Assembly: GCF_000002075.1 (NCBI RefSeq)
Contig: NW_004797520.1
Span: 304,072 to 368,071 of the forward strand
Direction: 5' to 3'
From: Aplysia californica
Lineage: Eukaryota
Length of the DNA stretch: 64,000 bases
How positions within the stretch are numbered: the first letter of the stretch is position 1; each line of letters begins with the position of its first letter. A program made the position numbers and the translations under genes. Shown here piece after piece: positions 6,701 through 31,900 of this stretch. The notes under the pieces were generated by a model that worked only from the letters and a program-made list of their open reading frames with translations, searched no databases and had not been told where the DNA came from.

Positions 6701-9700
6701 ATATGTAAGTTTCTGAAAATGTAGTTGCTGTAGCTGCTTATGATCTCTTTGAAACTTTTTTTCACTGACTGTTGTATACACAAGTTATGAGTGATTGGTT
6801 TGGAATTGTTCCCTTTTTTAGACTGGTCACTTTTATTTTATTTTACTGGTAAAATGGAATAGAAAATTAATCTGAAGCTCGAATAGATGGTTATGAATTC
6901 TTGGGTTTATTTTTTTTTATTATCTGAAACTTTTTACTGATTATTAAATAGCATATTATGTGTAATAAGTGTTTTCAAATGGGTAAATCAAATTTGTCTT
7001 ATTTAGTTGGCTTGAAATTAGGCGTACAACTCTGTTGGAAGTAATCCTGATTTCGTGTGGTCGAGGAAAACAAATAGGTCAGCGGAGAATGAAAGTTTTC
7101 TTCCTGTTTCTATTTGATTGTAAAGAAATGCTGATAAGTTCCTTTATCTGTCTAATTTCTCGCAGCGACCCAGTGGCCTGGAAATGGAGTGGATCTTTAC
7201 GATGTGAGGAGACAATCTTGGTAAGTAATTGACTTCGAAAGTTGAGAAGGCAAAGAGCCGTTAGTTATTCTTCAGTTCAGCATCATTATCACTACTATCA
7301 TTTGTATTTTATCATCATCATCATCGTTATCTTCATCTAGTATAAGGCTCTAAGTATATTGACAATGGAGCGGAAAAAGAGCCTCGCTCTCGCTCTCGCT
7401 CAAAGATTTCTTCGTGGAGTCCACCAGGCCCTTTAAGGNNNNNNNNNNNNNNNNNNNNNNNNNNNNNNNNNNNNNNNNNNNNNNNNNNNNNNNNNNNNNN
7501 NNNNNNNNNNNNNNNNNNNNNNNNNNNNNNNNNNNNNNNNNNNNNNNNNNNNNNNNNNNNNNNNNNNNNNNNNNNNNNNNNNNNNNNNNNNNNNNNNNNN
7601 NNNNNNNNNNNNNNNNNNNNNNNNNNNNNNNNNNNNNNNNNNNNGTCTTGACACACACTTCAAGCTGCTGATGAGACTTCTTAAATTTCTAGTGCTTCAT
7701 GACAGGGTGAAATTGTGCTGATGATAAAGTGTAATATGTTCTATGATGAGACCTCTATATTTTTCTTAAAGAGAAGATAAGATAAGATAAGATACATCTT
7801 TATTGTCCAGATCATGGATGATGGTAAAAATGACTTTCTGTATCTTTCTTTGTTACAGATCAGAAGCCCAGGTCTTTTACTTCTGACTGATGTTTTTATT
7901 TGAGAGAACAAGGGATGTTTACTGTCCAAAGAGATGGAATTAATTTTTTTTTAGTGCAACCTGTAATGTACAATTCATCCAAGTTACAACTTTGTTAGTA
8001 TTCACCTGACTCCAGAGTTCTGTTGCTGACATGACCTATTTTTCACCGGTGCTCTCACTTCACTCGACAGGTACACGCAGGGCTCCAGCTCTCCCAAGGA
8101 CATGATGATCCTGATTGACACGTACGTTGTTTGTGCACCAATCTGTAAATGACTTGGTTGCTTTTAAAGACAAGCGGGCTAACCCAGATTTCGGGGGTTT
8201 TCGAGAAATCTTGACCAACACCAAAAGTGGGCATTGCCCTACCTTTAGGAGAAGTTTGGTTTCATTGGTGTGTATATTTGTTTTGGTTATAGAGAAAACT
8301 CTCCTTGTCTTTTAAAGAAATTGAATAAGGATCCAAAAATTTTACCATCGATTTTCTCAAAACAGCATTTTTCGGGATAGTCCCCTTGTGCTTAAAAGCG
8401 ACCATTTACGTTCTAAAGATTGTTTAGTGGGTAGTTGCTGGGTGCTGTGGTAAGGTTTGCTCCATCTTTCTTGTAAAAATCTATCATCCTTAGCTCTTTT
8501 TCTTTCTTTTTTTTTGGTATGTTTCTTTCTAATCTTTGGCACCTTAATGATCTGTTTGTGGTGCAAGTGCTGTAAAACTTTTACTAAAACTAAAATTTAA
8601 TCACTTTTTGTTCTCACTGTAACAGAGGTAAGGAGCTTTCAAATGCTAAAGGCTGAGCAGCTTTCAATGTCCAACATGTCTACCAGATGAATAAATGAGT
8701 AGTTTCTGTTTGGTGAAACCTAATGGACAGTAATGTTTGCAGGACTAGCCCAGTAGTTGTCTGCCCCTTAACTCTTTTATCTCCGACAAGCCGGGACTAG
8801 CCCAGTAGTTGTCTGCCCCTTAACTCTTTTATCTCCGACAAGCCGGGACTAGCCCAGTAGTTGTCTGCCCCTTAACTCTTTTATCTCCGGCAAGCCGCTT
8901 GCGGTCGGGCACATTCCTTTACCATTTTGAATTTAAATTATTTTTTGGCAATTGCCCAAAACAGGTCTCTTTTTATCGGGATTTCATCATGTTTTGATTT
9001 AAGTTCACTTGTTTTGATTTATTGACCCATTTAGTGGCTTTTTTGTCATTTTTAGATTTAATACGGTAGTGGGTTTGCCCTCTCGGAGATATAGAGTTGA
9101 ACAGTCTGATCTCCACTCAGTGGTTGATATGTTGTGACTGATTGTTGTGAACTTTGAAATGTGTGAGTTAAACAGTCTCACACCCCCCAGGGTAGCTCTA
9201 CTGACTGAAGTGTCTTTAGGCCATTCTCAAAGGGGGGACATTAACATGTTCTTATGCACAGTAGAATTCAGATGGGCTGATTCTTCAATGTCATGATCAT
9301 AACTGCCTGAACTGCAACAGGGAACTGCTGCTTTTTCTATCTTAATCCTTACTATCGTCATTTTTCCTCTACTTCTTTTGTATGTTTGTCACACTCTTGT
9401 GACCCGCTATTTCTGGGGTGCCTTGATAGTCGAAGCAGACTTTATGCTGTTGAAACTGGAGAGGTGAGCAGCGTGAGCATGATTTCCTGTAAGGACTTCT
9501 CTGTTGACATCCACCCCTTGGCGCTGATTGTTGTGAACTTTGAGATGTGTGAGTTAACTGATTGTGAACTTTGAGATGTGTGAATTAACTGATTGTGAAC
9601 TTTGCTGTTGGCAGGAGTGGCAGCACACACGGCCAGTCGCTGCAGCTGATGCAGAACGCGGTCAAGTCCATTCTGGATACGCTAGGGGAGAACGATTTTG

Positions 9701-12700: not shown

Positions 12701-15700
12701 GGTTTGCTTCTTCTTTCCTATCAAACATCTATTGCTTTTATCTCCCCTCCTTCTTTTTTGTGTTTGTTACTCTCTTGTAACACCTCTAATCTTCGGCACT
12801 TATATGACAACCTTATCGTGTTGCAAGTGCCGTAAAACTTTTACTGAAACTAAACTCCCCTTTCTTCTTTTTTTTGTCTGTTAGTCTTTAGTAAAACCTC
12901 TTCTAGGGGGCTCTAATGGCCTAGAGGTTAAGGTGTTGGCCTCTCAATCAAAGGTCCCGGGTTCGAATCCGGGTAACGACTGAAAAATTTTCTTCTCTAA
13001 AATTGTCTCCTTTCACCTCCTTTCCTGCTCTCTAACAATGTTCTGTTGTCTGCTTTCATTTCCACTTTCTGCCCCCACCCCCTCACCTCCTTTGCCCCCT
13101 CCTCTGGGCTCCTGACTCTTTCTGCAGCCTTTCTACTGCTACTCCTTGGCTCCTCCTTACTGCTGTCTTTCTGCCACACCCCTGATCTTCTGGTAGGAAA
13201 GATCTACACCTAGCCTTCTCGGACAAGGGCGAAAAATCTCGGAGGGCCCGTGTGCAAGTTGCGCACGTTAAAGATCCCTTGGTGGTCTAAAATCGATAAG
13301 AGTAGGCTTCGGCCGCCACCCGGGCAAAATTCAAAATTTCCTACCAACTGAAAATATTAGGTGTGTCCCGCGCGCTCATATGACCTTATGCAGTTGCGAG
13401 CGCCGTAAAACACTTTACAAAAACAAACAAAAAAACCTCTAATCTTAGGCACTAGTATTACCTAACAGTGTAGCAAGTGCCTTGAAGCTCTTTATTGAAG
13501 TGGGTGGTTGGCGGGTGCTCTGGTGTGGTTTGCTTCTTCTTTCCTATCAAACATCTATCGTCCTTATCTCCCCTTCTTCTTTTTTTTGTTTGTTGCTCTC
13601 TTGTAACACCTCTAATCTTCTGGCGCTCATATGACTTTATGCAGTTGCGAGCGCCGTAAAACCTCTACTAAAACTAAAAGTCTTTATTAAAACTAATACA
13701 AGACTGAACAAAGACAACGTTTGTGGTTGACAGTTCAGCCAGAATGAGACGAACGACGAGAACAACATCGGCGCCAACTGCAACAAGGTGATCATGTTGT
13801 TGACCGACGGAGGCACCGACAACGCCAGGGACGTGTTCAAGAAGTACAACTGGGACAATAACAACAAAACGGTGAGTGAGTTGTCCCCCTTGCCTTGACA
13901 CTTTGCCGATCACAAGGCTCATATAGTAAAAACCTTTTGCCATCAAAGACCAAGGCATTTTGGGGAAAATTCCAAAGAAACTGGGTGATAAACATCGCCG
14001 ATCGGCGAGATGTTTGGAAGTTGGGAATATTGGCAGCCCTGATTTGTAAAGCAACAACTAAAACTGAAACCTAATAGTAAAATGTTTGTCATCATAGAAG
14101 CCATTCTCAAAGTGGGAACATAAACATGTTCTTGTGCTCAGTAGAATTGTAAATGGGCTGATTCATCAATGTCATGCTCACAACTGTGCCTGATCTACAA
14201 CAGGGAACTGCTGCTTTTTCTTTCCTAATCCTTACTATCGTCATTTTCCTCTACTTCTTTTGTTTGTCACACTCTTGTGACCTGCTATTACCGGGGTGCC
14301 TTGATAGTCTAAGCAGACCTTGTCCTGTTGAAGCTAGAGAGGTGAGAGGAATAAGCTTGATTCCGTGTATGGACTTCTCTGTTGACATCCACTCCTTAGC
14401 ACTCATATGACCTTATGCAGTTGCGAGCGCCGTAAAACCTTACTAAAACTAAACCAAAACACTCTGGCATACGTATTACTATTCAGTTTTTGTTCTTCAA
14501 CTTGAATTCGGCTATTGTTTTCTATATTCTAGTTCATACCTTGCTGTTCTATAAGTTTTATCCGAACAAAGTCATCTGTGATGTGTTGAATATTTTCTTT
14601 ATTGCTTCTCTGAGTGTGCTCATTTATGGTCTCCCCACCAGGTCCGTGTGTTTACCTACGCTGTGGGACCCACCCCAAACCCAATCACAGCGGTCAGGTG
14701 GATGGCCTGTGCAAACAGAGGTGAGGAAATGATATGAGTGCTGTGGTTTTGGTACCATCTCTTCCGCAGACTAAAATCCAATCTTTTATTTCTTTGTGAT
14801 CTTTAGTATGTTACAGATAATCTAAGTGATAATAATAATAATGATATTAATAATAATAATAATAATAATATGTAATAATTATATTAATAATAATGATAAT
14901 AATAATTAATATTTAATAATAATTGCATTTAACACTTTGCCATCATATTTTGGGGAATATCCAAAGAAACTGGGTGGTAAACAGGCGAGATGAGGCGGCA
15001 AAGTGGTAAATTGGCTTTTAGAGCCAACAGGTGGCTGTTGGAGCAGGTGTGACTGTACTTTTCCCTGTGTTGTCCTCTCGGCCAGGTTACTTCTCTCAGA
15101 TTCCTGCCATGGGAGCCATCCGAGCCAGAGTCCAGGTAACATCTCTCTATGTGTGCTCTATGTGTGTACTATGTGTGCTCTGTGTGCTCTGTGTGTGTAC
15201 TATGTGTTCTCTGTGTGTTGTGTGTGCTGTGTGTACTCTGGACGTCTGTGTACTACAGACGTTTGTGTGATGACTTTGTTTGTGGTTAAAACAGGGGGTG
15301 GGTGGGTTGTTGTGGGGGGGGGAGGGGTAGATGAACATCAGTGGTTAGAAAAGAGTGTGTGTGTGGGGGGGGGGGGGAAGGGGTATGTGATCACGAGAAA
15401 GGGGAAGGACTCTTTGTGCTGTGGGAACAACAGCAGTAATGGTTATATTTTGTTGCTGTGTGCGTTGGAGAACGTTCAGTGGACTCAATATGAGATGTGG
15501 GGGGGGGGGGGGGGGGAACGAAGAAATGGAAACTTACCCCTAATGTCGGTTGAATCTGACCACGCAGGCTCTTGCTTCGTCCCTCGTTTTTGAGTTGATG
15601 AAAAAGTTGCACTATGATATTTCTTGTGTTGTAAGGATGAACACAATTATTATAGATTCCTTGACTGATGGGATGCAGCAATTGATTTTTTTCCGCTCAT

Positions 15701-18700
15701 ATTAGGAACAGATGGGTCTGGGTTTTTTGGTTTATTCATTAATGGGGTTGTTTTATTTTTTTCTTAAACTGAGAAGATGACAGAGTTGTCGAATAATTGT
15801 CGCAAGCAAGATCACAGAAATCTGTTGCTTTATGTGTTTTTAATTAATAATCATTGGAAAATGCTAGATAGTCCATTTTATGCATATTTTCCTCCATCCA
15901 ACTGTCCTATTTCAAACTTATTCACTCTGTGAACCCAGTAAATATAAATCAAGTATTTTAGTTCAGCTCTCATGTAGTCGATGTTTGAAAAGTTCGTACT
16001 CCGAGATCCCTTGCACGATTAATTTTTAAAAACACATTTTGTCGTGGTTTTGATTTGATTAAACAGCTGTAAATATAAATAGTTATAGGTGATGCTAATG
16101 TTTAATGATGATGATTCTTATTTTCAGCGCAGCGTCATGTGTGAACTCAAATTTCATGATCGTACCTTGTTTCAGAAATGAGTATCATATAACTTGTTGG
16201 TGGGTGGTTGGTGGGTGCTCTGGTGTGGCTCGCTCCTTCTTTCAAGTCAAACATCTCACCTATCGTCCTGATCTCTCCTTTTTTTGTGTGTGTTATTCTC
16301 ATATAAAACCTGTAATCTTTGACACTTTTGACCTCTTTGTGTTTCAAGTGCTGTTCAACTCTAACTAAAACTAAAACTAAACTGGGTTGATGACCCTCTG
16401 TGGTATTTATGTCAACTCATGAGTCTATCTTTTTGTCTGTTTCATTTGTTCTTTTTCGTGGGTGGTTGGCGGGTGCTCTGGTATGGTTTGCTCGCTCCTT
16501 CTTTCCTACCAAACATCTATCGTCCTGATCTCTCCTCCTTTTTTGTGTTTGTTAATCTCTTGTAACACATCTATTCTTCTGCACTTGTATGACCTTATTT
16601 TGTGTTGCAAGTGCTGTAAAACTCTTACTAAAACTAAACCTCTTCTTTTTCATCTTTCTTTACCTGTATAATGCCAGCAGTCGTTGTTGTGCTTTCCCAG
16701 TAAGCTTTTAACATATTATTATCCAGTGGGTGGTTGGTGGGTGCAGCGATGCAGCTTGTAACTTGTACCTTTGTTCTGTGTTTCTGTTAATGCTTCTGTT
16801 ACTGTTTCTATTATTCTTATCTGCTCCTGGCCACTATGGCTGTCATGAAGCTGACTTTGTGACAACTGCCTCTCGGCTCTCTGACTGTGGGCGTTAGGTG
16901 GACACTCTGGTCTGGTTCGCTACTTCTTTCTATCATGCATCTATCATCCTTATCTCTCCTCCTTCTTTCCGTCGTATGTTACTCTCCAGTAAAACATCTA
17001 ATCTTATTTGTTTTGCAAATGCCATAAAACTCCAACAAAAATTAAATTAGACTTGTCACTGGTTCATAGCTTCTCTGGTCGCAATCATTGTATTGGCCAA
17101 TGATGTGTACATCAAAGCGGCATTTTATTGCAATGTTCGGGGTCCATAAAATATCGTCTGGATAAGATTCAGTGAGGGTCTGAACAGAGGAAAGCTGTGT
17201 TCTAGCTGACACGATGCCATCATGTTATTGTGACTTCAAGTATTTGGATATGTTTGTGTGGGTTGTTCGTGGATGTTCTGGTGTGGTTTGCTTGTTCTTC
17301 TTTCCTATCAAACATCTATCGTCTTTATCTCCCCTCCTTTTTTTTGTGTTTGTTACTCTCTTGTAACACCTCTAATCTTTGGCACTTATATGACTTTATA
17401 GTGTTGCAAGTGCCGTAAAACTCTTACTAAAACTAAAAATTGGACATGTTTGTCACTTGTGAATTTAATGTTAATCTTCTGCAATGTTTGAACTGAAGAG
17501 TTCCAAGAAAATAGTGTTGCCGACACTGTAGAACTGTAAACAAATTGATTCCTTGTTATATTTCTTTCCACATTCCGAAAAATTAAGTCCATTGATGCTT
17601 TGCATTATATCTAACCCTGCATTAACATAGGGACTGATGCTACCAGCATTCTCTGTAGTTTCAGACGGTTACAAAGTATTTACTGAAGTTACAAAGTATT
17701 CACAGAAGGTTACAAAGCATTCACAAAAGTTATAAAGCATTCACAAAAGTTATAAAGTTACAAAGTATTTACTGAAGTTACAAAGTATTCACAGAAGGTT
17801 ACAAAATATTCACAGAAGGTTACAACGTATTCACAGAAGGTTACAGAAGGTTACACAGTATTCACAGAAGGTTACAAAGTATTCACAGAAGGTTACAAAG
17901 TATTCACCGAAAGTTACAAAGTATTCACAGAAATGGAACCTGCAAGGGAATGGGGATGACGCTTTATGAATTTTTTTTTTTGGTTTTAGTCTCTTCTGAG
18001 ATTCCATATGAGCAGAATCCGACCGTATTGTAAGTCAGAACTATTATGAGATTATATTTTTTATGGTGACTTTCATGTAATTTATTTCTCAGAAAAGATG
18101 AGTAAGTACAATACATAGTGTCAGGGGCACCTTTACACCATTGTCCTTGTAGGAAAGAAGCAAAATCTATTTTTCAAAAAGGTGGACACTTTGATTTCAC
18201 TGTGGATATGTACATGACTTTTGTCACCGAATGTGCGGATTGGTATTTGGATGGATGAGTGAGTGGATGGTGATCGTGGATGTGTAAAGACTGAATGAAC
18301 AAAAGTCATAGCTTTATATCATGCTACAGGATCTTGTCCATACCTGGAATTTGGGTGTTCTTTTAGAGAGAGTTATGTACTCCATTTTGTCTGAAAATTG
18401 GTATTTGTGAACTTCAGGTTTATTCTAGAAATAGATGAGAGGAGAGAATAACAGTTTATAACAAAGAGTGAGCTTAAGAAGAAGTCACATTTTCAATGTT
18501 TAAAAAAATGGAGATGCGAGTAGAAAGCACCGAGGTGGCGATTTGTATAACTCTTCTGTAAGACTAAGAAAAGATTGAAACAGTTAGTGCTAACATTGGA
18601 TAATGAAGATGTGAGATTCAGGATGTTGTACAAATAAGAGATGAGAATAGAATAATGCTATGGCACTTCCATGAAAGTGATTTTTCTTGCATGAACATTT

Positions 18701-21003
18701 GTATAACTTTTCTTTACGTGTTGTAAAAGATTTATAGTGCAATTACGCGTAACTGAAGATGTGAGATTCAGAATGTTGTATAAATATGTGAAGAGAATAG
18801 AGTACTGCTATAGCACTTCAATGAAAGTGCTTCTTCTTGCATGTAAATTCGTATATTTTTTCTTTAAGTGTCATTAAAGATTTATAGTGCAAACCTGACG
18901 TGTAAATGAAGATATGAGCTTCAGGATGTTTGTATGAATATGAGTATGAGTCATTATTTAGTCCAAATATGGTTCTGGGAGAATTCTTAAGAATCAAGAT
19001 GTGTGGTTCCCTTGTGGTGTTTGTGTGCAGAACTGCGATGTTGAAGCTTTCTCGCTCTCTCTCTGTTTCCCTTCTACGCTGCTTGAAATGTGCAAAATGG
19101 CAGGACTATGTCCTCGTTCTAGAGCGGCCCCTGGCCTTGGCCCACATAGAACATGAAATGTGGACCAGTAGCCACAAAAATGTGTACTACGCAAAAGGCC
19201 AGAACCCGGTATAACCTTCCTCCCATCTCGGTTCATCACTCGTCTTCTTCTCTTTGCTTGACTTTAATCGTTTCTATTGGGCTGTTCATCTTGGATTGCT
19301 TCAGTTTTGGTTCTTTATCTCTACAATACCTACAATATTATTATGCTATTTTCATTCAAAGTTGAAGGAGAAAGTGAACAACAGAATTGTTTTTATTCAG
19401 AACGAAACAAATGTAATCATAATGAAGTTTGGTTGTTCTCGAGAACAACAGGACATTTTGTAGCCCTTGCTAATGAATCATATTTTGGCAAGAAGGAAAC
19501 ACAGACATACTCACTGTCCCCTCCCCTTCCCCATCTCACACACACCCAAACAGAAAACAGACGAAGTCATGGAATGATGAAAAGGTTAGGAATATATCCA
19601 AATCTCAATAACAGTGGCACCCAAAGAGGTGTTTCAGTTGCACACATGCTTTTCAATGAGAAAAATGTAAGATTTATTAACTTAACAGGTTTTTTTGGTA
19701 GGCAAATGTCCTTTTTTTAAGATAAGAGCTTGTCTAGAAGGATGCGTGTAGTATTGCTGTCCAGCTTGCTTTACGTGTATCATCATATACCTAGTTATTT
19801 GAGGGAGTAGCATGGTATTTTTTGTCGGTGGGTTTCCAGATTGCGTATCTTTTGATGATTGGGTGCAGTTAATCATGCTATGCGTATAATATATTTATGT
19901 ATTATATATATTATATATATCTATATATATACTTATTTGAATATATCCTCTCTTTTTTTTTTCTCAAGCGTACATGGTACATATTTTTTTTTTCTTCTCA
20001 TTTTGGTCCATACAGGATAAGGATGCTTTTATGGGAGTTGTTGCTTCTTCATGATGCTCATTGCGGTTCTTTCAGTAAATACAGCTCTCCATAACTATAC
20101 ATATATATATAATATACATTATATATACACTTTCCTTTTTTTCCTTCTCTTTTCCTCTAAGCCTGAGACTCTCCTCTTCTGTGCCTGTCGCTGAGCATAA
20201 CCACTGCCTGACAAAAGCACACAGCAGACTCTGCAAACGCTGGCTCACACTGCACCAGTTTGACTGTCACTTGCTCTTTTCACCACGATGCAGTGCTTTG
20301 TCCAGTCATAAAAAAGAAAAAAATAGTGAAGGTTATGAAGAGGCCTTTGCCGTCCTGTAAATGAAATTTCAGACTTTGAAAATGGTTTTGATTACCTCCT
20401 TATGGCTGCCTCTGTCTGTCAACAGAATTTGAGGAAAAATTGTCTTGCTCTCAAAAAAATTTCACCTGGGCAAGAAACATCAGCAGAAAGAAGAACAATT
20501 TTTTTTTTTCTTATTTTTTGTTCTGAACTAATAATTATTCATTTTGGGGAATTATTCAAGATGAACTTTAACCTGTTGCCATATTTTTGTTTCATTTGTA
20601 CCTTCTTGTTTTGTATGTTTTTTGTGGGTTTTTTTGTCAGTATAATGGTTTCCCATTTTGGCAGTCTTAACATCCGACTGAGGCAGTTGTACAGGCTCTT
20701 TAGGCTGTGGTTCTTCTCGTCAGTCAAGTGGTGTAAATTGTTTTTGGTGGCGCGTTGCGAGTGTGTGCCATGATGTGACCCCATGTGATATGTGCTTGTC
20801 CAATCTCCCAGGGCTACACGGACTACTTGAGAGCCACTCTAGAAAGTTATGGCGTGCAGGAAGAAAATTGGGAAGCGACCTATGACCCTAGGGTATGAAG
20901 GCCTGAACTAATCTCCCCACACCAGGCCTCGTGGCTGGGGAAGCTCAGTTGCTGAAGGCACTAACTCAATCCCTTTCTTTTGAGCGTTTTTTTTTTTGTT
21001 GAA

Positions 21004-21034
<31 letters not shown>

Positions 21035-24000
21035 CTGGCATCGGTCTTGATTTCTCACTTAATGAATTGACAAGGACTTGGAATAATGCTTTTGCTTTTT
21101 GAGTTTGAAGAAATAACAACAGCTTTCATAAGTTTTTGTTTTACGCACGGCATTTGATATTGGCAGAAACATCAGAAATACTCTTTTTGTTGTAATGATA
21201 GAACAATATTTAAATAAAATAATTACATAACAATGTAAAATAATTACATAACAATGTTTTGTTAAGGTATAGGCTACTTAATTTTTATTTAAAAAAAAAA
21301 AAGCCATGACTGTATTGTCACGAAATTTTCCTAAATTTTTATCGTGTTATTATTATATCACAGTATTCTGAAACTAGAAAGAATGTAGGTTACCTGTGTG
21401 GGTTTGAGTGCTATTTTCAGGATGGAAAGTTTTAGCACCCATTGATATAGAAGTTATTGAGTAGCACTTTAGTCAAGCATTTGTTGTTGAGATTATTCCA
21501 AGTCTAGCAGTTTCTCCATAGCATTTGATGCATTCTTTTTGGTTTTATCTTGCCTTTTAATCTTTAACTTTTGCAATATCACATCATCCAGCTAAATTAA
21601 CACCACTAAAACCACTCATTCTTGTTTGCTATTCAGTCCATGGTACAAGTAAAGAAGAGAGATTTGGGATGGATCTAATCCCAAATTTGTTGGATCAGTG
21701 ATTATTCCTAGATTGTAGTGAAACATCTTATGCAAGGAAATCATTTGAATGTCGTATTGCCAGGGTATTCTTGGAGGAAAGATAACTTTGAAAACATTCT
21801 TTGTGATGTTGAAGAATTTACGTCTTCCTTCTTTATTTGGTGTAGGGTTGTCAACTGTAATTTTTTAAAAAGTAAATGGTTAGAACAGACCAGCATAATA
21901 GGGTTGTTCTGTGAGCATCTGAACAGAGAAATCGAGTAGCAAACCAAAATCACCTCACAATGTCTGTACAAAATCTGGCACTTGAAGAAGAAGAAAGAAA
22001 TCATAAGTAATCTATCTGTATGTCTCTTGATTTTAATTTCTCTATTAGAGACTAAAAAAATGTTCTTTTTTTTTTATTGCACTTCTTTTGTTAAGGTAAA
22101 TTGGTCAGCTGGAAATTTTTCTTTGACTTTGATCACCCTCAGTTTAAAAGGATTTTTGTCATGATTTAGAAAATTGATTGCCTCTAGGGTGGTGTTCATT
22201 TTTTTCATCCTTATTTCTGAATTAATTTTATTCAGTCTCATTTCATGTGCCGAAAGATCTGAAGGTTGTTACTTTGGCCTGGTTTTGGTGGGAAGGGGCC
22301 GGGGAGTGCCCTGGTTAAATTTTTCTATTGCCAAGATCTGGTTCACTTACTTATTCTGTCCTTCCGTCGTTTTAGTTCTTCTCCAAGACATTTTCTGTTT
22401 GATTATCCTTTTCATTTTTCTTTTGGAGCCGCTAGCATTGCAGCTTTTCTTTGAACTGACGACATGTTTGATGCTGTTCCTTGACCGCTTCTCTCCCTCT
22501 GCTTGGGATTGCCGCAAGCGTTTGACCTCTGTCTGCTGAGTGTGTGGGCTGGAATGTCCCTTTTGCTTCTGTTTTCTTCTTTGAGATCTCCAGAAACTTA
22601 AGGGGGAGGAGGAGGAGGAGGAGAGAGTATGTAGGAGGCAAAAAGAGACAGTGAATAAACAATGGAGGAGAGATTATAGGAGGCAAAGAGAGACAGTGAA
22701 CAAACAATAGAAGAGATTATAGGAGGCAAAGAGAGACAGTGAACAAACAATAGAAGAGATTATAGGAGGCAAAGAGAGACAGTGAACAAACAATGGAGGA
22801 GAGAGATTATAGGAGGCAAAGAGAGACGGTGAACAAACAATAGAGAAGAGATTATAGGAGGCAAAGAGAGACGGTGAACAAACAATGGAGGAGAGAGATT
22901 ATAGGAGGCAAAGAGAGACGGTGAACAAACAATGGATGAGATAAAAAGGTTGGGGGGAGAGTGGCAGTCTTTGGAAGTGCAAGAGTAAAGGAGTAACAAA
23001 TACAAGAGGAAAGGAGTAACAAATACAAGAGGAAAGGAGTGACTTTTCTGAAAAGAAGCACTAGTTTAAACGTTCCTTCCACATGATATGTTGCGTCTGT
23101 ATCTATCTGTCGGTCTCTTGGTTTTTCAATAAGGCGAAGTCCTGCTACTGGTGACTATGAATATACTGTTCCAGCCGCGCTAACAAAGCCGAGGATTTTT
23201 CTGTTCTGAAGCCCTACATTCACAAATGGGAATTATATCAGTGTCTTTTTTTAGATGTTGAGGAGTAGGGACTCTGAGGGCTGGGAAAAAGGTTGGTGGG
23301 GGCAGACACATTCTCCTCTCACATGTTGTCTCCCGTGTGACAAGACAGGCTAAACTTTGTGGAGTAAAGTTTTCAGGAGTGGCAAAAAACCTGTTTTGTT
23401 TTATTATGTGGCTGGTGGGTTCTTCGGCTTTATTTCTAATGTTTGAGGAGAATTCCTAGTCAAAAGTCAGACCTGTTTCTGACTGAGCATAAGAAAAAGA
23501 TCGTTTACTATCAAACTCGTCAAATTAGAAAGGAAAAAAAAATTGTGCGGGTTATCGAGTCTTGTCACAGGACAATGATGTTGTGTTTGACATGTGGGTA
23601 TCCAGTTTTTGATGTGAAGGAGGGAAGAATAGATTGAAAGTTTTAAATAAGTTAAACTGGCAGACTGAGACTAGTTGGTCAAAAGTTGAGATGGCAGAAC
23701 TGGAGTAAATAAAAGGCTGAAAGACAAGTGTGCCAGGGGAGAGGAAGGAAGGAATTCACGCCAGGTTCACCATAGGAATGAGTGGAAAGAGGGGATTTAA
23801 GCCTATGTTCCTCTTGTTTTCATGTAGGCATATACACACACATACACATGCACGTGAGTGCGTGCACACAAATACACAGTTGCACACGGGAGCACATACA
23901 TACAAATATGTGTACACACTCGTACACACACACACACTTCACACACACACACTCAAATCAACTTGAGCACACACACTCTTGTAGAAATAAGCCTCATTCT

Positions 24001-27000
24001 ACCAACATGATCATTTTCCAACTCTTTCTTGAGCACATCTGAACATGCTCACATTTTTATGAACACATATTAATAAAATATGACATAACGTAAATGGAAC
24101 AGGCTACAGGATCCTCAGATGCTGACGACATATTTCCAAAAATCTGATAACTTCTTTAGGAGAATTCTGCCTCGTGTGTCGTGCCATTCTCTCTCTGTAG
24201 TGCCTTGTTCAGAATGGAGAACAGTAAATCTTTTCAATACCATTGTTCGTTGTTAGCTCTGTCCTATTTGGCACGCCTAATCTCTCTATACTCTCTTGAG
24301 AGATGAAAACCGAGAATGCCTTTACTTTAATTTGTCTTGAAGCGATTTTTTTTTTCACCTGCTATTCACAAATGTAGCATGCGTACGTCATGTTTTTATA
24401 CAATAATTTTTTTCTCCCGTATTTTTGAGTTTTGATATTGCTGGCTGACCACGTCAGTTTTGTCATTGTGCTGCCCTGTGGGACTGACCTATTGCAGTGA
24501 CCGTAGCAGCTTACAGTCTGTCACTGTGTGTCTGGAAGGTGCATTGGCCATTTTTTCCCTAGCTAGAGGAACTGAGGACAAAGGACGTAGACAGTTATAA
24601 CTCACTTGTTTGATTCATTTTCAGCAATGGCAGGGGACTGTTTGGTGTCAGAGGCAGAGGGCTCATGACTGGAACTAATTTTTTTCCTTCATGTTGTATA
24701 TAGGTTTTTTTGTGGTTAAAAGGACGATGTGTTGCTGAATCCCATTTGGTGGCGGGAAGAAAGTATGCACTATGTGTGTGTTTTATTTTTGTTGATTCTT
24801 TCAGAAGTCGGTGTTTAAGGGGTGTTTCTTCCTTGTGTATGAATGTATTGAAGGTTCTGCCTCCTGTGTTTGTCCGTGCCAACCAGGTGGATGGGAATGT
24901 GTTCTTACACGTTTGTGTCTTCAATGTGTAGTGTGTTCTCTTCCCCTTCATGAGGTGGATGGGAATGTGTTCTTACATGTGTGTGTCTTCAGTGTGTAGT
25001 GTGTTCTCTTCCGCTTCATAAGGTGGATGGGAATGTGTCCTTACATGTTTGTGTCTTCAATGTGGTGGATGGGAATGTCTCTTTACACGTGTGTGTCTTC
25101 AGTGAGGTGGATGGGAATGTCTTCTTACACGTGTGTGTCTTCAATGTGTAGTGTGTTCTCTTCCCCTTCACTTCAAGGAGTATATCCCTGTCCTGAGTCG
25201 GCCGCAGGTCATCAAAAACAAGAAAACCTTTGAGTGGGGCAACATTTATGAGGACACTTTGGTATTTGCACATTTTGCCTCATGCTGGTCATTGACTATT
25301 GATATTGTCACTTTGCTTTTTATTCATTGTATTTATTTCAGACGTCATGTAGGCTGTTGTAGATTCTCAAACGTTAATAATTAGATCAATACTTGTCTGT
25401 TTTACATTTTCTTTTTAAAGATCGTATGAAATGAAGGTTAAGATATGTTTATAATATTTATATCTGAAACATAATTTTTCAAAAGGATAGAATAACTGTA
25501 AATATTATGTTGATAGAGCAAATTGTTTGCTATGCATTCTAAGAAAAATAATCATGATCATTGAAGATGAAAATCTAGCAGCTAGTGGAAGGAAATGTAG
25601 TACCAGGATAAGTTGTCACCAAAGAAATCAGCCAACAGATGTCGTTAAAAAGTTGACGGAGCTTGAACTGGAAAATTTGAAGCTAAACAACGTTAGAAAG
25701 TAAGCAAGTAGTAAGAGATATCCCCAAGGTAACCGAATTCTAAGGAGAACATCACATCAAAATTAAATATAACAAATAAAGATTAAGAAAGAGAACATTG
25801 CAATTATTGGACGCAGTTTGTTAGATTGCGATGTCTCATAGAGTAGATAGGGCGGACATCGCTAGCAACTAGCAGTTGGTGTTGCGTGTGAGAGATGTTG
25901 GACATGATGTGTAGCTGCGTGTCCATGTCACTGTTGTGTCTCCTGCCTACCCGCCCCCCCCCCACTTTGTTTCAGCGTCTCTGACATTATGTGCTTAGTC
26001 GAGCGTCGGAAAATTTATTTTTGGACGTGTCACACTTGTCTATGTAGTTTAGAATGCAGTGCACAGTCATTGACACTGGTGTTTTGACCATAGCTCATTA
26101 GCTGTATGTCCTTCTGTTGTGAAAGTTCTTGATTCTTTGAGTTGGATCAAGACTTTGTAACATGCTGTGAATGACTCATTGTTTGGTAAAGATCGTAAAC
26201 CTTGCAATGTTCCTGACATAAATGCTAGTAGAAAAATAAGAAGAATGATATCAAGAAATGAGCTCCTGGCATAAATTTAGGAGTATTGGACATATTATTG
26301 TTCCGTTTAAAGATTGATGTTAATATAATTCAATGTCCCAGAATATATTCCCAGGCATCAGAATGTATACACTGCTAAACTGTTTCATTGGTGCCGATCT
26401 GTTTTAGCTGTTTGTGCTACGTCAGTTTGATCACATTCCAAATAGTTGACTTATGAGAGAGAAAGATTCTTCAACACGGCTGTGTTGTTGTGAGGTGTAT
26501 GGCTTGGTGTGACCAAAAAGAAACCGTAGACGTCCCTGTGTTGTGTCCCTGGTACTTCGCTGTAGAGCACTCGTGGCGTGTGACTACCCTTGCACCTTTT
26601 GCTTCAACAAATTATCTCCTTTGTTGGGTATTTTGTTAGTCGTCCGTTCTTTCTTCAGTGTCTCAGCTGTTGCAGTAAAGTAAATATTGGCCAACACTCT
26701 TTGTATATATTTGTGTGTACTTAAACAATGATATACTTATATTATAATAAAGATAAGCTTTGTAATCTCTTTCTTTTTTACTCGGGACTAGGGAAGCTAG
26801 CAAATCCTCTAGTGCGTCATTTGGTTTGTGCTGATTAAAACCTGTAATTTCTTTGCCATATCGACTGACCGAAGAGCTAGAACCCAAATGACCGCTGGAT
26901 CGGAAAAGTAAAGTAAAAGTAAAGTTTGGGCAGTTTCCTGTTCTGTGTACAGTGGTCTCCGTCTAAGAACACAGCATTTATGAACCTGGTCAGTGAAAGA

Positions 27001-28987: not shown

Positions 28988-31900
28988 ACTATCATTATCA
29001 TTTGTGGTAGTACTTTTTTGTTAAGTATTTATTCTATAAGTGTTGGAAAATTTGAGACAGTCGCGCAAACGTGAAGCCATCGTTTCCCTCTGCTTGATGC
29101 TGAGGTGCCGTTAGTTGAGGGAATTCCTCCAACACGCAGAGTTGCTCTGTTTGAATTGTGTAATGGAATCTGAATGTTCTTTGCTAAGGTAGAGCAATTT
29201 CCCTTACAGCTTGTTGTCCTGGTTTGAGACTTATTAAAGTAGTTTGATTTGTGTCTAATTCTAATTGGACGCAATGTTTCCTATTTTTGAAAATGTTGCA
29301 AAGGATAGTGTGCTGTTCTTGAAACAGAAGTAATTCAACGGAGGCGTCAAAGCCATGACGACAGGGAGACTTAGAAAAGTTTATAGTGGAAAACTTTTTA
29401 CTAGTGTTTTTGATAACAGAGAGAATAAATGTGTTTTTTACAAACTGGCAACCTTTTTAAAGATGCTTTAGAGAGCAGAGAGAATTTGTGTTTTTTACAA
29501 ACTGCTATCCATCTAGGTCTATATATTGTGACCTATACCAGAGGTTTGGTCACTTGTTTTCTCAGTTTCTGCATCGACACAGTTGTAATTGCTGTTTACT
29601 TTACTTTGTCTGTTAAATTTACAAGTTCTAGAATGCTCAAGCTGTTAAATATTCCCTCTATGTGACTCAAACTGCTGTGTTTTTGTGAGCGCTGTAGTGT
29701 TTTAGCGTGCATGCGTGCCTGTCGTCAAGTGGCCTCATCTATTGTATCTTTTGCTTGCTGCATGCGCATGGCCATTTTGCTCCGCAGAGTTGCCTTAGTT
29801 TCTGACTCACAATGTTTTTATCACCCTAGCACGGACAGTTATGTAGATACCTTTTTAGAAGATTATGATTATGAAATTTTAAAATCTTATGTTTAATTAA
29901 ATAGTTATCAATTTTACATCTCTTTATAATATATTTTACTGTACAGGACTTGGTAAGATTTAGCGTTATTGTTACTAATACTAAAGTTGCTTTTACTTTT
30001 ATTAATACAATTATTATTGTTGCAGTTGGTGATTTTTATAACGGTTTCTTTTTTTAGCAGTAAAATTGTTACAGATTCAGTTTTACCATCCATTGTAGTG
30101 GAAATTCTTGCTGTTGATGATTGTAAAAGGAATAATTTGTAACATGAAAAGATTTCATTGCAGTATTTGGAATTCCTTGTTTTATAGTTTTGAAACAGAT
30201 TTCCTTATTAAAAAAGTACTTGAACTTAAAATTAATTTTCTCCAATAATCAAGCTAGAGTGCTATTTTTCCATGTGTATATTATTTTGTGTGGATTTCAA
30301 GTTTCACTCCATGTTGTTTGTAAACTTCCATCGTTCACAGTTGTATGAAAATTTTGTTCCTAATCCAGGGGCTTGGCATGATGACTACAGTGACTTTGCC
30401 GGTCTACAACCGCAGCGCGGGATCTGTACGTGAACTCTCTTTTCTTTTATGAGAAAGACTTTTTTCTTCTTTTTTTTTTCTTTTTTCTTTTTTTTTTTTT
30501 TAAAGATATGCCTGTATTTGGTTGGAGTGCACCCCTGGGAGGTCCTACTTCTTTTCTTTCTGTCAGTTGTTTCTGTCTGTCTATCTTGCTTCTTCCCTGC
30601 ACTATATATATGCCTACTTCTGATGTTGATGTGTTTCTCTTTACTCCAACATTTCTTTTGATAATGACAAGATGTTAGTGTGTAGACAAAATATTTATTA
30701 AGGCCTAAGAGTATGAGCAGAATGACTTGTCACCTAGAAGCAGAAGCAAATAGAAGTGAGACGTGATGAATCTGCCTTCCTCTTGAGATAAAGCAGTTAT
30801 CTCAAGTTATAGTCAAATTTATACATAGGTAACGGTTTTCAACCCACCCCCCCCATTGTAAAATTTGTACATCTTTATTTCTTGATAGCCTGTAGTCTGT
30901 ATAAGCTGGTGTTGTGTCAAATAACAGCTGCTGCGTGAACTGTTTGTGATTATATACATATGTGAATTGTTTGTGAATATACCTGTGCTGTGTGTGAACT
31001 TGCAGTCGAACCAGACCATCCTGGGAGTAATGGGGGTTGATGTGACCACGGCTGAGCTGGAGTCCAAGTCGCCGTTTTCTAAGGTCTGTGGCCTTGTCAA
31101 ATTTGACTTAATTTGAATTTCTCAATGTGTTATTGCTCAATTCTGTACAACTATTGGAAAGCAGTGAAAAGAATTTGTTCATTGTTTCAGAAAGCAACAT
31201 CCCAGCATTCCGGACATATCATTTGATGCTCCGTTGCTCCCTCCAAAATGTCGCTGAGGGTCTTTCTAGAGAGAAAAGAAAAGAAAGATAAAATTCTTAA
31301 CTAAGAATTGAAAGTGTTTGGAGAGGAGGTTTCCTGATTGAATTGTCAGAGACAGGACTTCATTTTATAAAATAAAATTGACTTTTTTTCCATCTATATT
31401 CAATTTCCTCAGTTTCTGTAAAAACTTTGACTGTAATAATTGTTTCATTTTTTGTGTGCTTTTAATCATTGTTCAAAACTTAAGTGTATTTTCAGATGTT
31501 TTTTTTTTAACTTGCAGTTTTAACTTTTTTCAAAGTAAGGGAAAAGTTAGTCACATGAATATGATTTATAAACTGTTAACTAATTTTTTATTGTATCCTT
31601 TCCATCCAGATGGGGCCAAACGGATACACATTTGCTATTAACCCAAATGGCTATGTGGTGTTTCATCCTAACCTGAAGACAGGGGTGAGTTCAACAATTG
31701 GTCAGCTCATCAAGCTTAGAAATAAATGCACATAATCTACATGGTTTCTACAAGAATGAAAGCATCAGAAACGGTCTCTGTTATCAATGTTTAAAATATC
31801 ATGTTTTTATGAATTTCAAGTAACGTTATGTTTAAAGTTAAATTTGTTTACAAAAGTTCAAGATTTTTTATTTCTTGCCCTATCGGAGCTCTGGTATGTA

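What the first reader, a model, noticed from the sequence alone, without database searches (positions are those of the whole stretch)
19104..25261. Cluster of three paralogous, probably mutually exclusive exons that swap the post-VWA / dCache pocket segment of alpha2delta
Seen: the 15-kb interval between exons 14 and 16 holds three open, AG/GT-bounded, phase 0-0 cassettes: [35 protein letters not shown] (19104-19208), [27 protein letters not shown] (20812-20892) and [28 protein letters not shown] (25178-25261). All have Tyr at 2, Leu at 6 and Trp at exactly 20 despite little DNA similarity, which suggests old duplicates kept at the protein level. Known: this segment returns from the VWA domain into the first dCache domain and carries the W-x3-Y-x-D part of the amino-acid/gabapentinoid pocket. 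Inference: exon choice gives pocket variants YED, YDP or HKN, i.e. splice-switched ligand or partner specificity. I am not aware of such a cassette in vertebrate CACNA2D genes.
Basis: partly seen in the sequence, partly recalled or inferred. Interest (0 to 1): 0.88.

Follow-up and report, generated by a model that had tools for sequence, protein, structure and literature searches.

The report
Three alternative exons in Aplysia alpha2delta
A calcium-channel helper gene of the sea hare Aplysia carries three interchangeable versions of one small exon that lines the protein's amino-acid/gabapentin pocket; the arrangement is real and ancient, but it was already reported in 2018.

Summary

**What the window is.** It is the Aplysia californica CaV alpha2delta gene: two published cloning primers match it exactly.

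**The three exons.** Between exon 14 (ends 15135) and exon 16 (starts 30369) lie three AG/GT-bounded, phase 0-0 exons: 15a, 15b and 15c.
- Profiles built only from other species' proteins pick out exactly these three in the 15-kb intron (E 1e-15, 1e-5, 1e-21).
- The order a-b-c recurs in Lymnaea, Biomphalaria and an oyster.
- RefSeq isoforms of many molluscs carry one type each.

**Prior publication.** Dunn et al. [quoted passage not shown] They show Aplysia transcripts 14-15c-16 (the clone) and 14-15a-16.

**What is new here.**
- Their third sequence is not 15b and has no genomic match, so 15b is the real third exon.
- Similar clusters occur in a brachiopod and an annelid.
- The exon encodes the AA_motif Tyr and three more of the 13 pocket-lining residues.
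- Gastropods have lost the motif's key Arg (RRQ).

**Limits.** Strict exclusivity and any ligand switch remain unproven.

The parts
15087..15135 (+). Constitutive exon 14 (..[16 protein letters not shown]). It ends in phase 0 and has donor gtaaca.
   Evidence: Sequence; tblastn of Lymnaea protein P0008; DNA conserved with Lymnaea.
19104..19208 (+). Alternative exon 15a (35 codons, type a). It keeps the VL.RPLALA..W motif. The pocket Tyr position is His, the Asp position is Asn, and it is 7 codons longer than 15c.
   Evidence: Type-a profile E 1.1e-15. Orthologous unannotated exon in Lymnaea L004 13474-13581 and Biomphalaria L005 20076-20183. Published Aplysia transcript joins RVQ + this exact peptide + GLGMM. 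Third-codon-position excess of differences against Lymnaea, 7/4/13.
20812..20892 (+). Alternative exon 15b (27 codons, type b). It has no VLSRP motif, ends in ..YDPR, and keeps the Asp while the motif Tyr position is Thr.
   Evidence: Type-b profile E 1.1e-5, the only hit in the interval. Same length, phase and position as b exons of Lymnaea, Biomphalaria and Saccostrea. The 3' end and donor region are 83% identical to Lymnaea DNA. b-only RefSeq isoforms exist in other molluscs. No Aplysia transcript evidence was obtained.
25178..25261 (+). Alternative exon 15c (28 codons, type c, canonical). It has EYIPVLSRP...W.NIY.D.L and is the variant nearest the single vertebrate exon.
   Evidence: Type-c profile E 9.5e-22. 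25/28 residues identical to Lymnaea and Biomphalaria, with differences mostly at third codon positions. It is the variant in the cloned Aplysia cDNA KY705238, which gave currents with CaV2 in HEK cells.
30369..30425 (+). Constitutive exon 16 ([19 protein letters not shown]). It starts in phase 0.
7166..7220 (+). Exon with the N-terminal half of the dCache_1 amino-acid motif (..[10 protein letters not shown]). The Gln codon at 7213-7215 stands where alpha2delta-1 has the ligand-carboxylate Arg243.
   Evidence: RRQ is present in all gastropods examined except Candidula; RRR is present in bivalves, cephalopods, a chiton, annelids, a brachiopod and nemerteans.
31006..31083 (+). Exon 17 ([13 protein letters not shown]..). 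The Asp codon at 31039-31041 corresponds to alpha2delta-1 Asp493, the ligand-amine partner.
   Evidence: The column is invariant in alignment A1.

Best explanation
The window holds the Aplysia californica CaV alpha2delta gene on the + strand. Exon 15 exists in three tandem, homologous, in-frame versions (a, b, c). As a rule one of them is spliced between exons 14 and 16. This gives three protein isoforms that differ only in a 27-35-residue segment.

That segment leaves the VWA domain and re-enters the distal module of the first dCache_1 domain. In alpha2delta-1 it supplies the 'third Tyr' of the amino-acid-binding motif and the pocket-lining residues Asp454, Ala455 and Leu456.
- 15c is the ancestral, canonical version (Y-x-D-x-L).
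- 15a replaces Tyr with His and Asp with Asn, and adds a 7-residue tail.
- 15b lacks the VLSRP helix motif and the Tyr, but keeps the Asp (DPR).

The triplet predates the split of gastropods, bivalves and cephalopods.

Shown: the exons, their homology, their conservation, transcripts for a and c, and the mapping onto pocket residues.
Inferred: use of 15b in Aplysia, predominance of single inclusion, and that exon choice retunes or disables the pocket or another surface of this module.
For: **Identity of the gene.**
- Two published Aplysia alpha2delta primers match the window with 0 mismatches (primers).
- The exons are collinear with Lymnaea alpha2delta P0008 over residues 60-1077.
- An orthologue hits PDB alpha2delta-1 at E 1e-101.

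**The exons are real.**
- Profile E-values as above.
- All have canonical splice sites.
- Against Lymnaea, collinear DNA conservation in the 15-kb interval is confined to exon 14, a, the 3' end of b, and c; the only other match was a 24-nt reverse-strand hit (E 0.003).
- Differences are biased to the third codon position in c and a.

**Conservation of the cluster.**
- The order a-b-c holds in Lymnaea L004, Biomphalaria L005 and Saccostrea L006 (a-d-b-c). The chiton L007 has a and c.
- A tree of the units groups them by type, not by species: b 98/100, c 94/90, with c next to the vertebrate exon.

**Alternative use.**
- Published Aplysia transcripts show 14-c-16 and 14-a-16, and the table row reads 'three mutually exclusive exons'.
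- The three Saccostrea echinata isoforms differ only at this site.
- Single-variant isoforms are listed for Haliotis, Biomphalaria, Physella, Pomacea, Ostrea, Crassostrea, Mytilus and Octopus.
- Full-length products of Logan run assemblies whose variant segments equal or closely match the Octopus RefSeq ones carry a or c singly.

**Pocket mapping.**
- Chen et al. list the pocket residues.
- HMMER alignments of a- and b-type proteins to solved alpha2delta-1 place the variants on YLDAL.
- The 73-sequence alignment shows the same.
- The AA_motif is described by Gumerov et al..
Against:
- 15b was not among the three Aplysia sequences reported in 2018. It is the least constrained variant: 44-48% identity to other heterobranchs and only a weak third-position bias.
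- RefSeq/Gnomon and other models in several molluscs contain two variants in tandem (a+c, b+c, a+b, a+d), all three, or none. All lengths are multiples of 3, so neither frame nor NMD enforces exclusivity.
- No docking/selector RNA pairing was found.
- The gastropod protein has Gln at the Arg243 position. An R-to-A change at that position abolishes gabapentinoid binding in mammals. A classical amino-acid ligand is therefore doubtful for any Aplysia isoform.
- AlphaFold models of a-only and b-only Biomphalaria isoforms have pLDDT 30-55 in the variant segment.
Confidence: 0.8

Rival explanations
1. The three exons are independent cassette exons rather than a strictly mutually exclusive set. Transcripts with two variants in tandem, or with none, are normal products.
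For: - Database models contain a+c (Haliotis X1/X2, Physella X1/X3, C. gigas X2, Saccostrea X1), b+c (Biomphalaria X1/X2, Ostrea X1/X3/X4), a+b (Pomacea X1, C. virginica X1/X2), all three (Elysia crispata P0141, Biomphalaria P0279), and none (Biomphalaria X6, Ostrea X10, Pomacea X6, Octopus X6).
- All three lengths are multiples of 3 and the flanks are phase 0, so every combination stays in frame.
Against: - The double forms are the longest (X1/X2) automatic Gnomon or ab initio models. These can chain every supported exon without a read that joins two variants.
- The transcripts that can be inspected all carry exactly one variant: the Aplysia clone, the Aplysia transcriptome contig, and seven full-length products of Logan assemblies with Octopus-like segments.
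- A duplicated or missing strand in the dCache_1 distal module is unlikely to fold. This last point is an inference.
Confidence: 0.15
2. In Aplysia only 15a and 15c are used. 15b is a decaying or silent relic of an exon that is still active in other molluscs.
For: - Dunn et al. found a and c in the transcriptomes but not the 15b sequence.
- 15b has the lowest profile score (20.5 bits), the longest tree branch (0.84), and little third-position bias.
Against: - The frame is open for exactly 27 codons.
- The acceptor has a pyrimidine tract, and the donor region is conserved with Lymnaea, including intron bases.
- The terminal DPR and Trp20 are kept.
- b-type is evolving fast in every lineage yet is retained and annotated as b-only isoforms in Biomphalaria, Physella, Pomacea, Haliotis, oysters, a scallop and freshwater mussels.
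- The published third Aplysia sequence has no genomic counterpart: its best match is 15c at 65%. That transcriptome survey was therefore imperfect.
Confidence: 0.12
3. 15a and 15b are chance open reading frames in a long intron, and only 15c is an exon.
For: 394 open AG/GT phase 0-0 cassettes exist in the interval, and the pairwise scores of 15a and 15b to 15c are at background level.
Against: - Profile E-values are 1e-15 and 1e-5.
- Orthologous exons lie at the same relative place in three other genomes.
- An exact published transcript exists for 15a.
Confidence: 0.01

Closest known systems
Aplysia CaV alpha2delta 'Alternative Splice 7' (Dunn, Fan, Ase, Seguela & Sossin 2018, Sci Rep 8:3263, PMC5818475)
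   Same: It is the same gene and the same site. [quoted passage not shown] Their clone carries 15c and a transcriptome contig carries exactly 15a.
   Different: - Their third Aplysia sequence (contig CL815Contig1) is not 15b and is not encoded in this genome. It reads like an a/c hybrid of an assembly.
- The genomic exon 15b, the exon coordinates, the link to the ligand pocket (solved later) and the spread beyond molluscs are not in that paper.
Automatic RefSeq isoform sets of mollusc alpha2delta genes (e.g. Saccostrea echinata X1-X3, Haliotis cracherodii X2-X5, Biomphalaria glabrata X1-X6, Octopus bimaculoides X1-X6)
   Same: They carry orthologous a, b and c (and, in oysters and mussels, a fourth 25-residue d) variants between identical flanks.
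   Different: They are annotation only, with no description. They mix single, double and zero inclusion. In Lymnaea and in one Biomphalaria annotation the a exon is missed altogether.
Vertebrate CACNA2D1-4
   Same: The protein architecture is the same and there is a single c-like exon (EYLDVLGRPMVL..WTNVY.DAL). Gabapentin and L-Leu bind in the pocket that this exon lines.
   Different: No variant cluster was seen at this position in the vertebrate, amphioxus, hemichordate or spider proteins examined. The amphioxus locus has one exon 15. The known vertebrate alpha2delta-1 splice regions A/B/C lie elsewhere; this last point is from my own knowledge and was not tested.
Mutually exclusive exon clusters with competing RNA pairing (insect Dscam1, 14-3-3zeta type)
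   Same: Both are tandem arrays of homologous, equal-phase exons of which one is chosen.
   Different: No docking or selector complementarity beyond chance was found in the window. No intronic block is conserved between Aplysia and Lymnaea. The mechanism is unknown.
dCache_1AA amino-acid sensor motif (Gumerov et al. 2022 PNAS, PMC8915833)
   Same: The motif has two parts, Y....R.WY before the VWA insertion and Y[x27-34]D after it. The second-part Tyr lies in exon 15 and is present in 15c.
   Different: The motif Arg is Gln in Aplysia and in all other gastropods examined except Candidula. 15a and 15b lack the Tyr at the aligned position.

Membership tests
Voltage-gated calcium channel alpha2delta subunit | VWA_N, VWA, dCache_1 and VGCC_alpha2 domains in this order; sequence similarity to solved alpha2delta-1 | tested here: met
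   Window exons are collinear with Lymnaea P0008 (residues 60-1077), whose precomputed Pfam set is VWA_N, VWA, dCache_1 and VGCC_alpha2. Orthologue P0007 hits PDB alpha2delta-1 at E 1e-101. Published Aplysia alpha2delta primers match exactly.
Mutually exclusive exon cluster | Tandem exons that are homologous to each other, in the same phase and of similar length | tested here: met
   Lengths are 105, 81 and 84 nt, all phase 0-0. The exons share Tyr2, Leu6 and Trp20. A general profile of all types hits all three (E 1.8e-12, 1.9e-6, 1.7e-3) and nothing else.
Mutually exclusive exon cluster | Exactly one member in each mature mRNA | tested here: inconclusive
   Single inclusion is seen in the Aplysia clone and contig, in products of Logan assemblies with Octopus-like segments, and in many RefSeq isoforms. 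Automatic models with two, three or no variants also exist.
Mutually exclusive exon cluster | A known enforcing mechanism (steric hindrance by a short intron, U2/U12 incompatibility, frame shift plus NMD, or docking/selector RNA pairing) | tested here: not met
   The introns between variants are 1603 and 4285 nt. All sites are GT-AG with no U12-like donor. All lengths are multiples of 3. No complementarity beyond chance was found. That search was crude, so a pairing with bulges or G-U pairs is not excluded.
dCache_1AA amino-acid-binding motif | N-terminal part Y....R.WY, with the Arg binding the ligand carboxylate | tested here: not met
   The window encodes Y-D-V-R-R-Q-S-W-Y, with Gln at 7213-7215. 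The same holds in all gastropods examined except Candidula. Arg is kept in the other lophotrochozoans examined.
dCache_1AA amino-acid-binding motif | C-terminal part Tyr ... Asp (rabbit alpha2delta-1 Tyr452 and Asp493) | tested here: met
   It is met for 15c only: Tyr in ..NIYED.., and Asp at 31039-31041 in exon 17. 15a has His at the Tyr position. In 15b the aligned position is Thr, with a Tyr one residue later.
dCache_1AA amino-acid-binding motif | Actual binding of an amino acid or gabapentinoid | not testable with these tools
   This needs binding assays or a structure of the mollusc isoforms.

The most novel reading that the evidence does not exclude
The exon-15 cluster is a lophotrochozoan-wide splice switch on the alpha2delta ligand pocket and is more than 500 million years old. 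Variants that keep the motif Tyr and Asp (c, d, and the cephalopod and chiton a) would give an amino-acid-sensing subunit. The b variants, and the gastropod and oyster a variants, would give a subunit with a disabled or retargeted pocket. Neurons would thus choose by splicing whether their calcium channels respond to an endogenous pocket ligand. Gastropods, which lost the Arg but kept all three exons, would then point to a second, ligand-independent role of this segment.
Probability: 0.3. Interest if true: 0.65.

Novelty: already known. Interest (0 to 1): 0.35.

Why it matters
The physiological role of the alpha2delta dCache_1 pocket, the gabapentin and L-leucine site, is still open. Natural isoforms that differ only in four pocket-lining residues and their neighbours would be a ready-made experiment on that question.

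Several points make the system usable for such an experiment:
- It is available in Aplysia, a classic model of synaptic plasticity, where the c isoform is already cloned and functional.
- It is also available in oysters and octopus, which keep the full binding motif.

For annotation, the work shows three things:
- The real third exon in Aplysia is 15b.
- The third sequence published in 2018 is not genomic.
- Several mollusc gene models wrongly chain or miss these exons.

Tried and rejected
- **PDB search with the bare exon peptides.** phmmer found nothing, because the queries are too short.
- **Read laying on 19050-25049.** There is therefore no junction, depth or sister-species evidence.
- **The search for homologous proteins for short transcript fragments containing 15a.** There were no candidates.
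- **The window's own annotated proteins.** They did not appear among the homologues, so own-species isoform models could not be inspected.
- **Pairwise similarity of the three exons as proof of paralogy.** Rejected as insufficient and replaced by profile searches.
- **A fourth (oyster-type d) variant in the window.** Not found. The weak hit at 15236-15265 lies in a low-complexity tract.
- **The published third Aplysia variant.** It is not in the genome.
- **Docking/selector RNA pairing.** blastn of the interval against its reverse complement gave only poly-A/T and chance matches (E >= 0.18). RNAduplex energies were within about 2.7 sd of shuffles (one search timed out).
- **The Lymnaea/Biomphalaria conserved intronic block.** It is absent from the window.
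- **AlphaFold2 of natural a-only and b-only Biomphalaria isoforms.** Overall pLDDT was 77, but the variant segment scored 30-55, so no structural inference was drawn.
- **Other loci.** The Elysia, Haliotis, Lineus and millipede loci were not on record, and the Ptychodera gene was too long to fetch.
- **Spliced model.** Exons were searched one by one by reference and the joined step was left out. Local scripts used only short typed anchors to find the segment in database proteins: an exon 13-14 anchor that spans that junction, and an exon 16 anchor.


Full report
**Observation.**
- Each is flanked by AG and GT.
- Exon 14 is 15087-15135 and ends in phase 0. Exon 16 begins at 30369 in phase 0. 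Any single variant therefore keeps the frame.
- Each peptide occurs once in the 927-Mb genome, so none belongs to a repeat.

By itself the similarity among the three is weak. The 15,233-nt interval contains 394 open AG/GT phase 0-0 cassettes of 60-150 nt. 15a against 15c scores 32 (BLOSUM62 local) beside background scores of 27-28, and 15b is not distinguishable from background.

**What the gene is.**
- A search of 1.84 billion representative proteins with the neighbouring exon 13734-13871 returned alpha2delta proteins. The named top hits are molluscan.
- tblastn of the Lymnaea protein P0008 lays out the whole gene on the + strand, from about 2.9 kb to 51 kb.
- Dunn et al. 2018 (PMC5818475) cloned Aplysia californica CaV alpha2delta. 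Two of their primers match the window without mismatch, at 636-655 and 11134-11152.

**The three exons are real and old.**

*Protein evidence.* Between identical flanks (..[12 protein letters not shown] | x | [14 protein letters not shown]..), proteins of other molluscs carry one of three recognisable segment types:
- type a: VL.RPLALA..WTS, with a C-terminal extension;
- type b: 27-30 residues ending in DPR;
- type c: EY[IV]PVLSRP..W.NIY.D.L.

Profile HMMs were built from those segments without the window. They hit the window's interval only at 19104 (a, E 1.1e-15), 20812 (b, E 1.1e-5) and 25178 (c, E 9.5e-22).

*Genomic evidence.* In the loci that could be fetched, the same order recurs with canonical splice sites:
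- Lymnaea L004: a 13474, b 15092, c 17667;
- Biomphalaria L005: a 20076, b 22025, c 23693;
- the oyster Saccostrea L006: a 20803, a fourth 25-codon variant d at 22460, b 23587, c 24507;
- a chiton (L007): a and c.

The a exon of Lymnaea is not in its annotated protein, yet it is 53% identical to 15a.

*DNA evidence.* Between Aplysia and Lymnaea the only collinear conserved blocks in the interval are exon 14, 15a, the 3' end of 15b with its donor, and 15c; the one other match is a 24-nt reverse-strand hit at E 0.003. Differences by codon position (1st/2nd/3rd) are 3/2/11 for c, 7/4/13 for a and 7/12/15 for b. Thus c and a show clear coding-type constraint, and b shows a weaker one.

*Tree.* A tree of 50 units is short (28 columns), so it is only indicative. 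It groups units by type rather than by species: b 98/100, c 94/90 next to the vertebrate exon, and a as a grade. The duplications therefore predate the gastropod-bivalve-cephalopod split.

*Beyond molluscs.* Clusters of four 84-nt variants, all AG/GT bounded, also lie between the equivalent exons of the brachiopod Lingula (L010). Four variants of 84-90 nt lie there in the annelid Capitella (L009). The amphioxus locus L011 has a single exon 15.

**Alternative use.** Direct evidence for Aplysia comes from the literature.
- The supplement of Dunn et al. ('Alternative Splice 7') shows the cloned cDNA KY705238 with RVQ + 15c + GLGMM.
- It also shows a transcriptome contig with RVQ + the exact 35 residues of 15a + GLGMM.
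- The c isoform gave CaV2 currents in HEK cells.

Their third Aplysia sequence (contig CL815Contig1) is not 15b. Its best match in the whole genome is 15c at 65% identity, and it reads like a mixture of a and c. I take it for an assembly artefact and 15b for the true third member.

In other molluscs:
- The three RefSeq isoforms of Saccostrea echinata differ only here: a, b, and a+c.
- Single-variant isoforms of each type are listed for Haliotis, Biomphalaria, Physella, Pomacea, Ostrea, Crassostrea (with d), Mytilus and Octopus.
- Seven full-length proteins from Logan run assemblies, whose variant segments equal or closely match the Octopus RefSeq ones, carry a or c singly.

Against strict exclusivity, the longest automatic models in several species chain two or three variants, and some skip all. 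No combination breaks the frame, so this cannot be dismissed on sequence grounds.

**What the segment does in the protein.**
- Chen et al. (bioRxiv 2022.12.05.519047) list the residues lining the gabapentin/L-Leu pocket of rabbit alpha2delta-1: Trp207, Val209, Tyr219, Trp225, Tyr238, Arg243, Trp245, Tyr452, Asp454, Ala455, Leu456, Thr463 and Asp493.
- HMMER alignments of an a-type protein (P0007) and a b-type fragment (P0082) to solved alpha2delta-1 chains place the variant exon on ..WTNVYLDAL...
- Chains that start two residues later in numbering (7jpk/8fd7) reproduce the rabbit numbers. Tyr452-Leu-Asp454-Ala455-Leu456 therefore belong to exon 15, and Thr463 belongs to exon 16.
- Gumerov et al. 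(PMC8915833) describe the same Tyr as the third Tyr of the universal amino-acid motif, Y....R.WY before the VWA insertion and Y[x27-34]D after it.

The 73-sequence alignment A1 shows how the variants treat these positions:

| Variant | Tyr452 position | Asp454 position | Other features |
|---|---|---|---|
| c and d variants, and every non-lophotrochozoan exon in the set | Tyr | Asp | canonical W...Y.D.. pattern |
| Aplysia 15a | His | Asn | 7 extra residues |
| a in bivalves | Tyr | Gly in oysters | - |
| a in cephalopods and the chiton | Tyr | Asp | - |
| b variants | variable (Thr in 15b, with a Tyr one residue later) | Asp (DPR) | no VLSRP motif |

The exon 7166-7220 encodes ..[10 protein letters not shown]. 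The Arg that binds the ligand carboxylate (Arg243) is Gln here, with its codon at 7213-7215. An alanine substitution at this position abolishes gabapentinoid binding.

This RRQ is shared by all gastropods examined except Candidula. Bivalves, cephalopods, the chiton, annelids, the brachiopod and nemerteans keep RRR. The Asp493 equivalent is kept (31039-31041; invariant in A1).

So in Aplysia a classical amino-acid ligand is doubtful for every isoform. All three exons are nevertheless retained in gastropods. This suggests that the segment also matters for something other than canonical ligand binding, such as folding or trafficking, another ligand, or a partner surface.

AlphaFold2 models of the natural a-only and b-only Biomphalaria isoforms are good overall (pLDDT 77). 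They are unreliable in exactly this segment (pLDDT 30-55). They show a helix through the exon 14/15 junction and, for a, a short strand at the Trp. I draw no conclusion from them.

**Mechanism of choice.**
- The introns between variants are 1603 and 4285 nt, so steric exclusion does not apply.
- All sites are GT-AG.
- The variant donors (gtataa, gtatga, gtattt) depart from the GTRAGT consensus, as is usual for regulated exons.
- Frame or NMD cannot act.
- No docking or selector complementarity above chance was found.
- No intronic block is shared with Lymnaea.

How single inclusion is enforced is unknown.

**Verdict.** The feature is already known: Dunn et al. 2018 for Aplysia, and automatic isoform annotation in many molluscs. 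A search of the held literature found no other paper on it.

The following seem new:
- the genomic identity of the third exon (15b), and the non-genomic nature of the published third sequence;
- the a-(d)-b-c order across classes;
- comparable clusters in a brachiopod and an annelid;
- the mapping onto four pocket residues;
- the gastropod loss of the motif Arg.

Exons were searched singly by reference.

Noticed in passing
window 39082-39141 (+): A 60-nt AG/GT cassette encodes ..[20 protein letters not shown]. It equals 'Alternative Splice 8' of Dunn et al. 2018, a cassette exon between the Cache region and the C-terminus.
   Followed up: partly
window 7213-7215 (+): There is a Gln codon at the position of the ligand-binding Arg243 of alpha2delta-1 (RRQ instead of RRR). 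It is shared by all gastropods examined except Candidula and not by other lophotrochozoans.
   Followed up: partly
L011 (Branchiostoma) 44770-44818 and 44911-44959: In amphioxus the 49-nt exon 14 equivalent is present twice in tandem, both copies AG/GT bounded. Exon 15 is single. Because 49 is not a multiple of 3, this looks like a classical mutually exclusive pair one exon upstream.
   Followed up: no
L004 (Lymnaea) 15745-15835 and L005 (Biomphalaria) 23007-23104: A roughly 100-nt non-coding block is conserved between the two snails in the intron between the b and c exons. It contains the palindrome TGATGCATCA and is absent from the Aplysia window. It may be a lineage-specific splicing regulator.
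   Followed up: partly
L006 (Saccostrea) 22460-22534; proteins P0167, P0321, P0288, P0261: Oysters and mussels have a fourth, 25-residue variant (..VLSGSY.TELPLWTSVY.D.L) between a and b. It keeps the pocket Tyr and Asp but lacks the RP motif.
   Followed up: partly
L010 (Lingula) 15458-15541, 16543-16626, 17911-17994, 20426-20509; L009 (Capitella) about 1089-1172, 1522-1605, 1816-1899, 2033-2122: Four variant exons in each lie between the exon 14 and exon 16 equivalents. Only one (Lingula) or a read-through chain (Capitella) is in the annotated protein.
   Followed up: partly
window 15140-15290 (+): A TG-rich low-complexity tract, (TGTGTGCTC)n-like, lies directly after the exon 14 donor. It gives spurious weak profile and duplex hits.
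   Followed up: no
window, many introns (e.g. 10332-10790, 12601-12881, 16099-17415, 33101-33710, 38667-38994): There are numerous copies of one short interspersed repeat. Its translation reads ..[26 protein letters not shown].. in the ORF lists.
   Followed up: no
They lie in the intron between 15a and 15b and were left out of all later searches.
   Followed up: no
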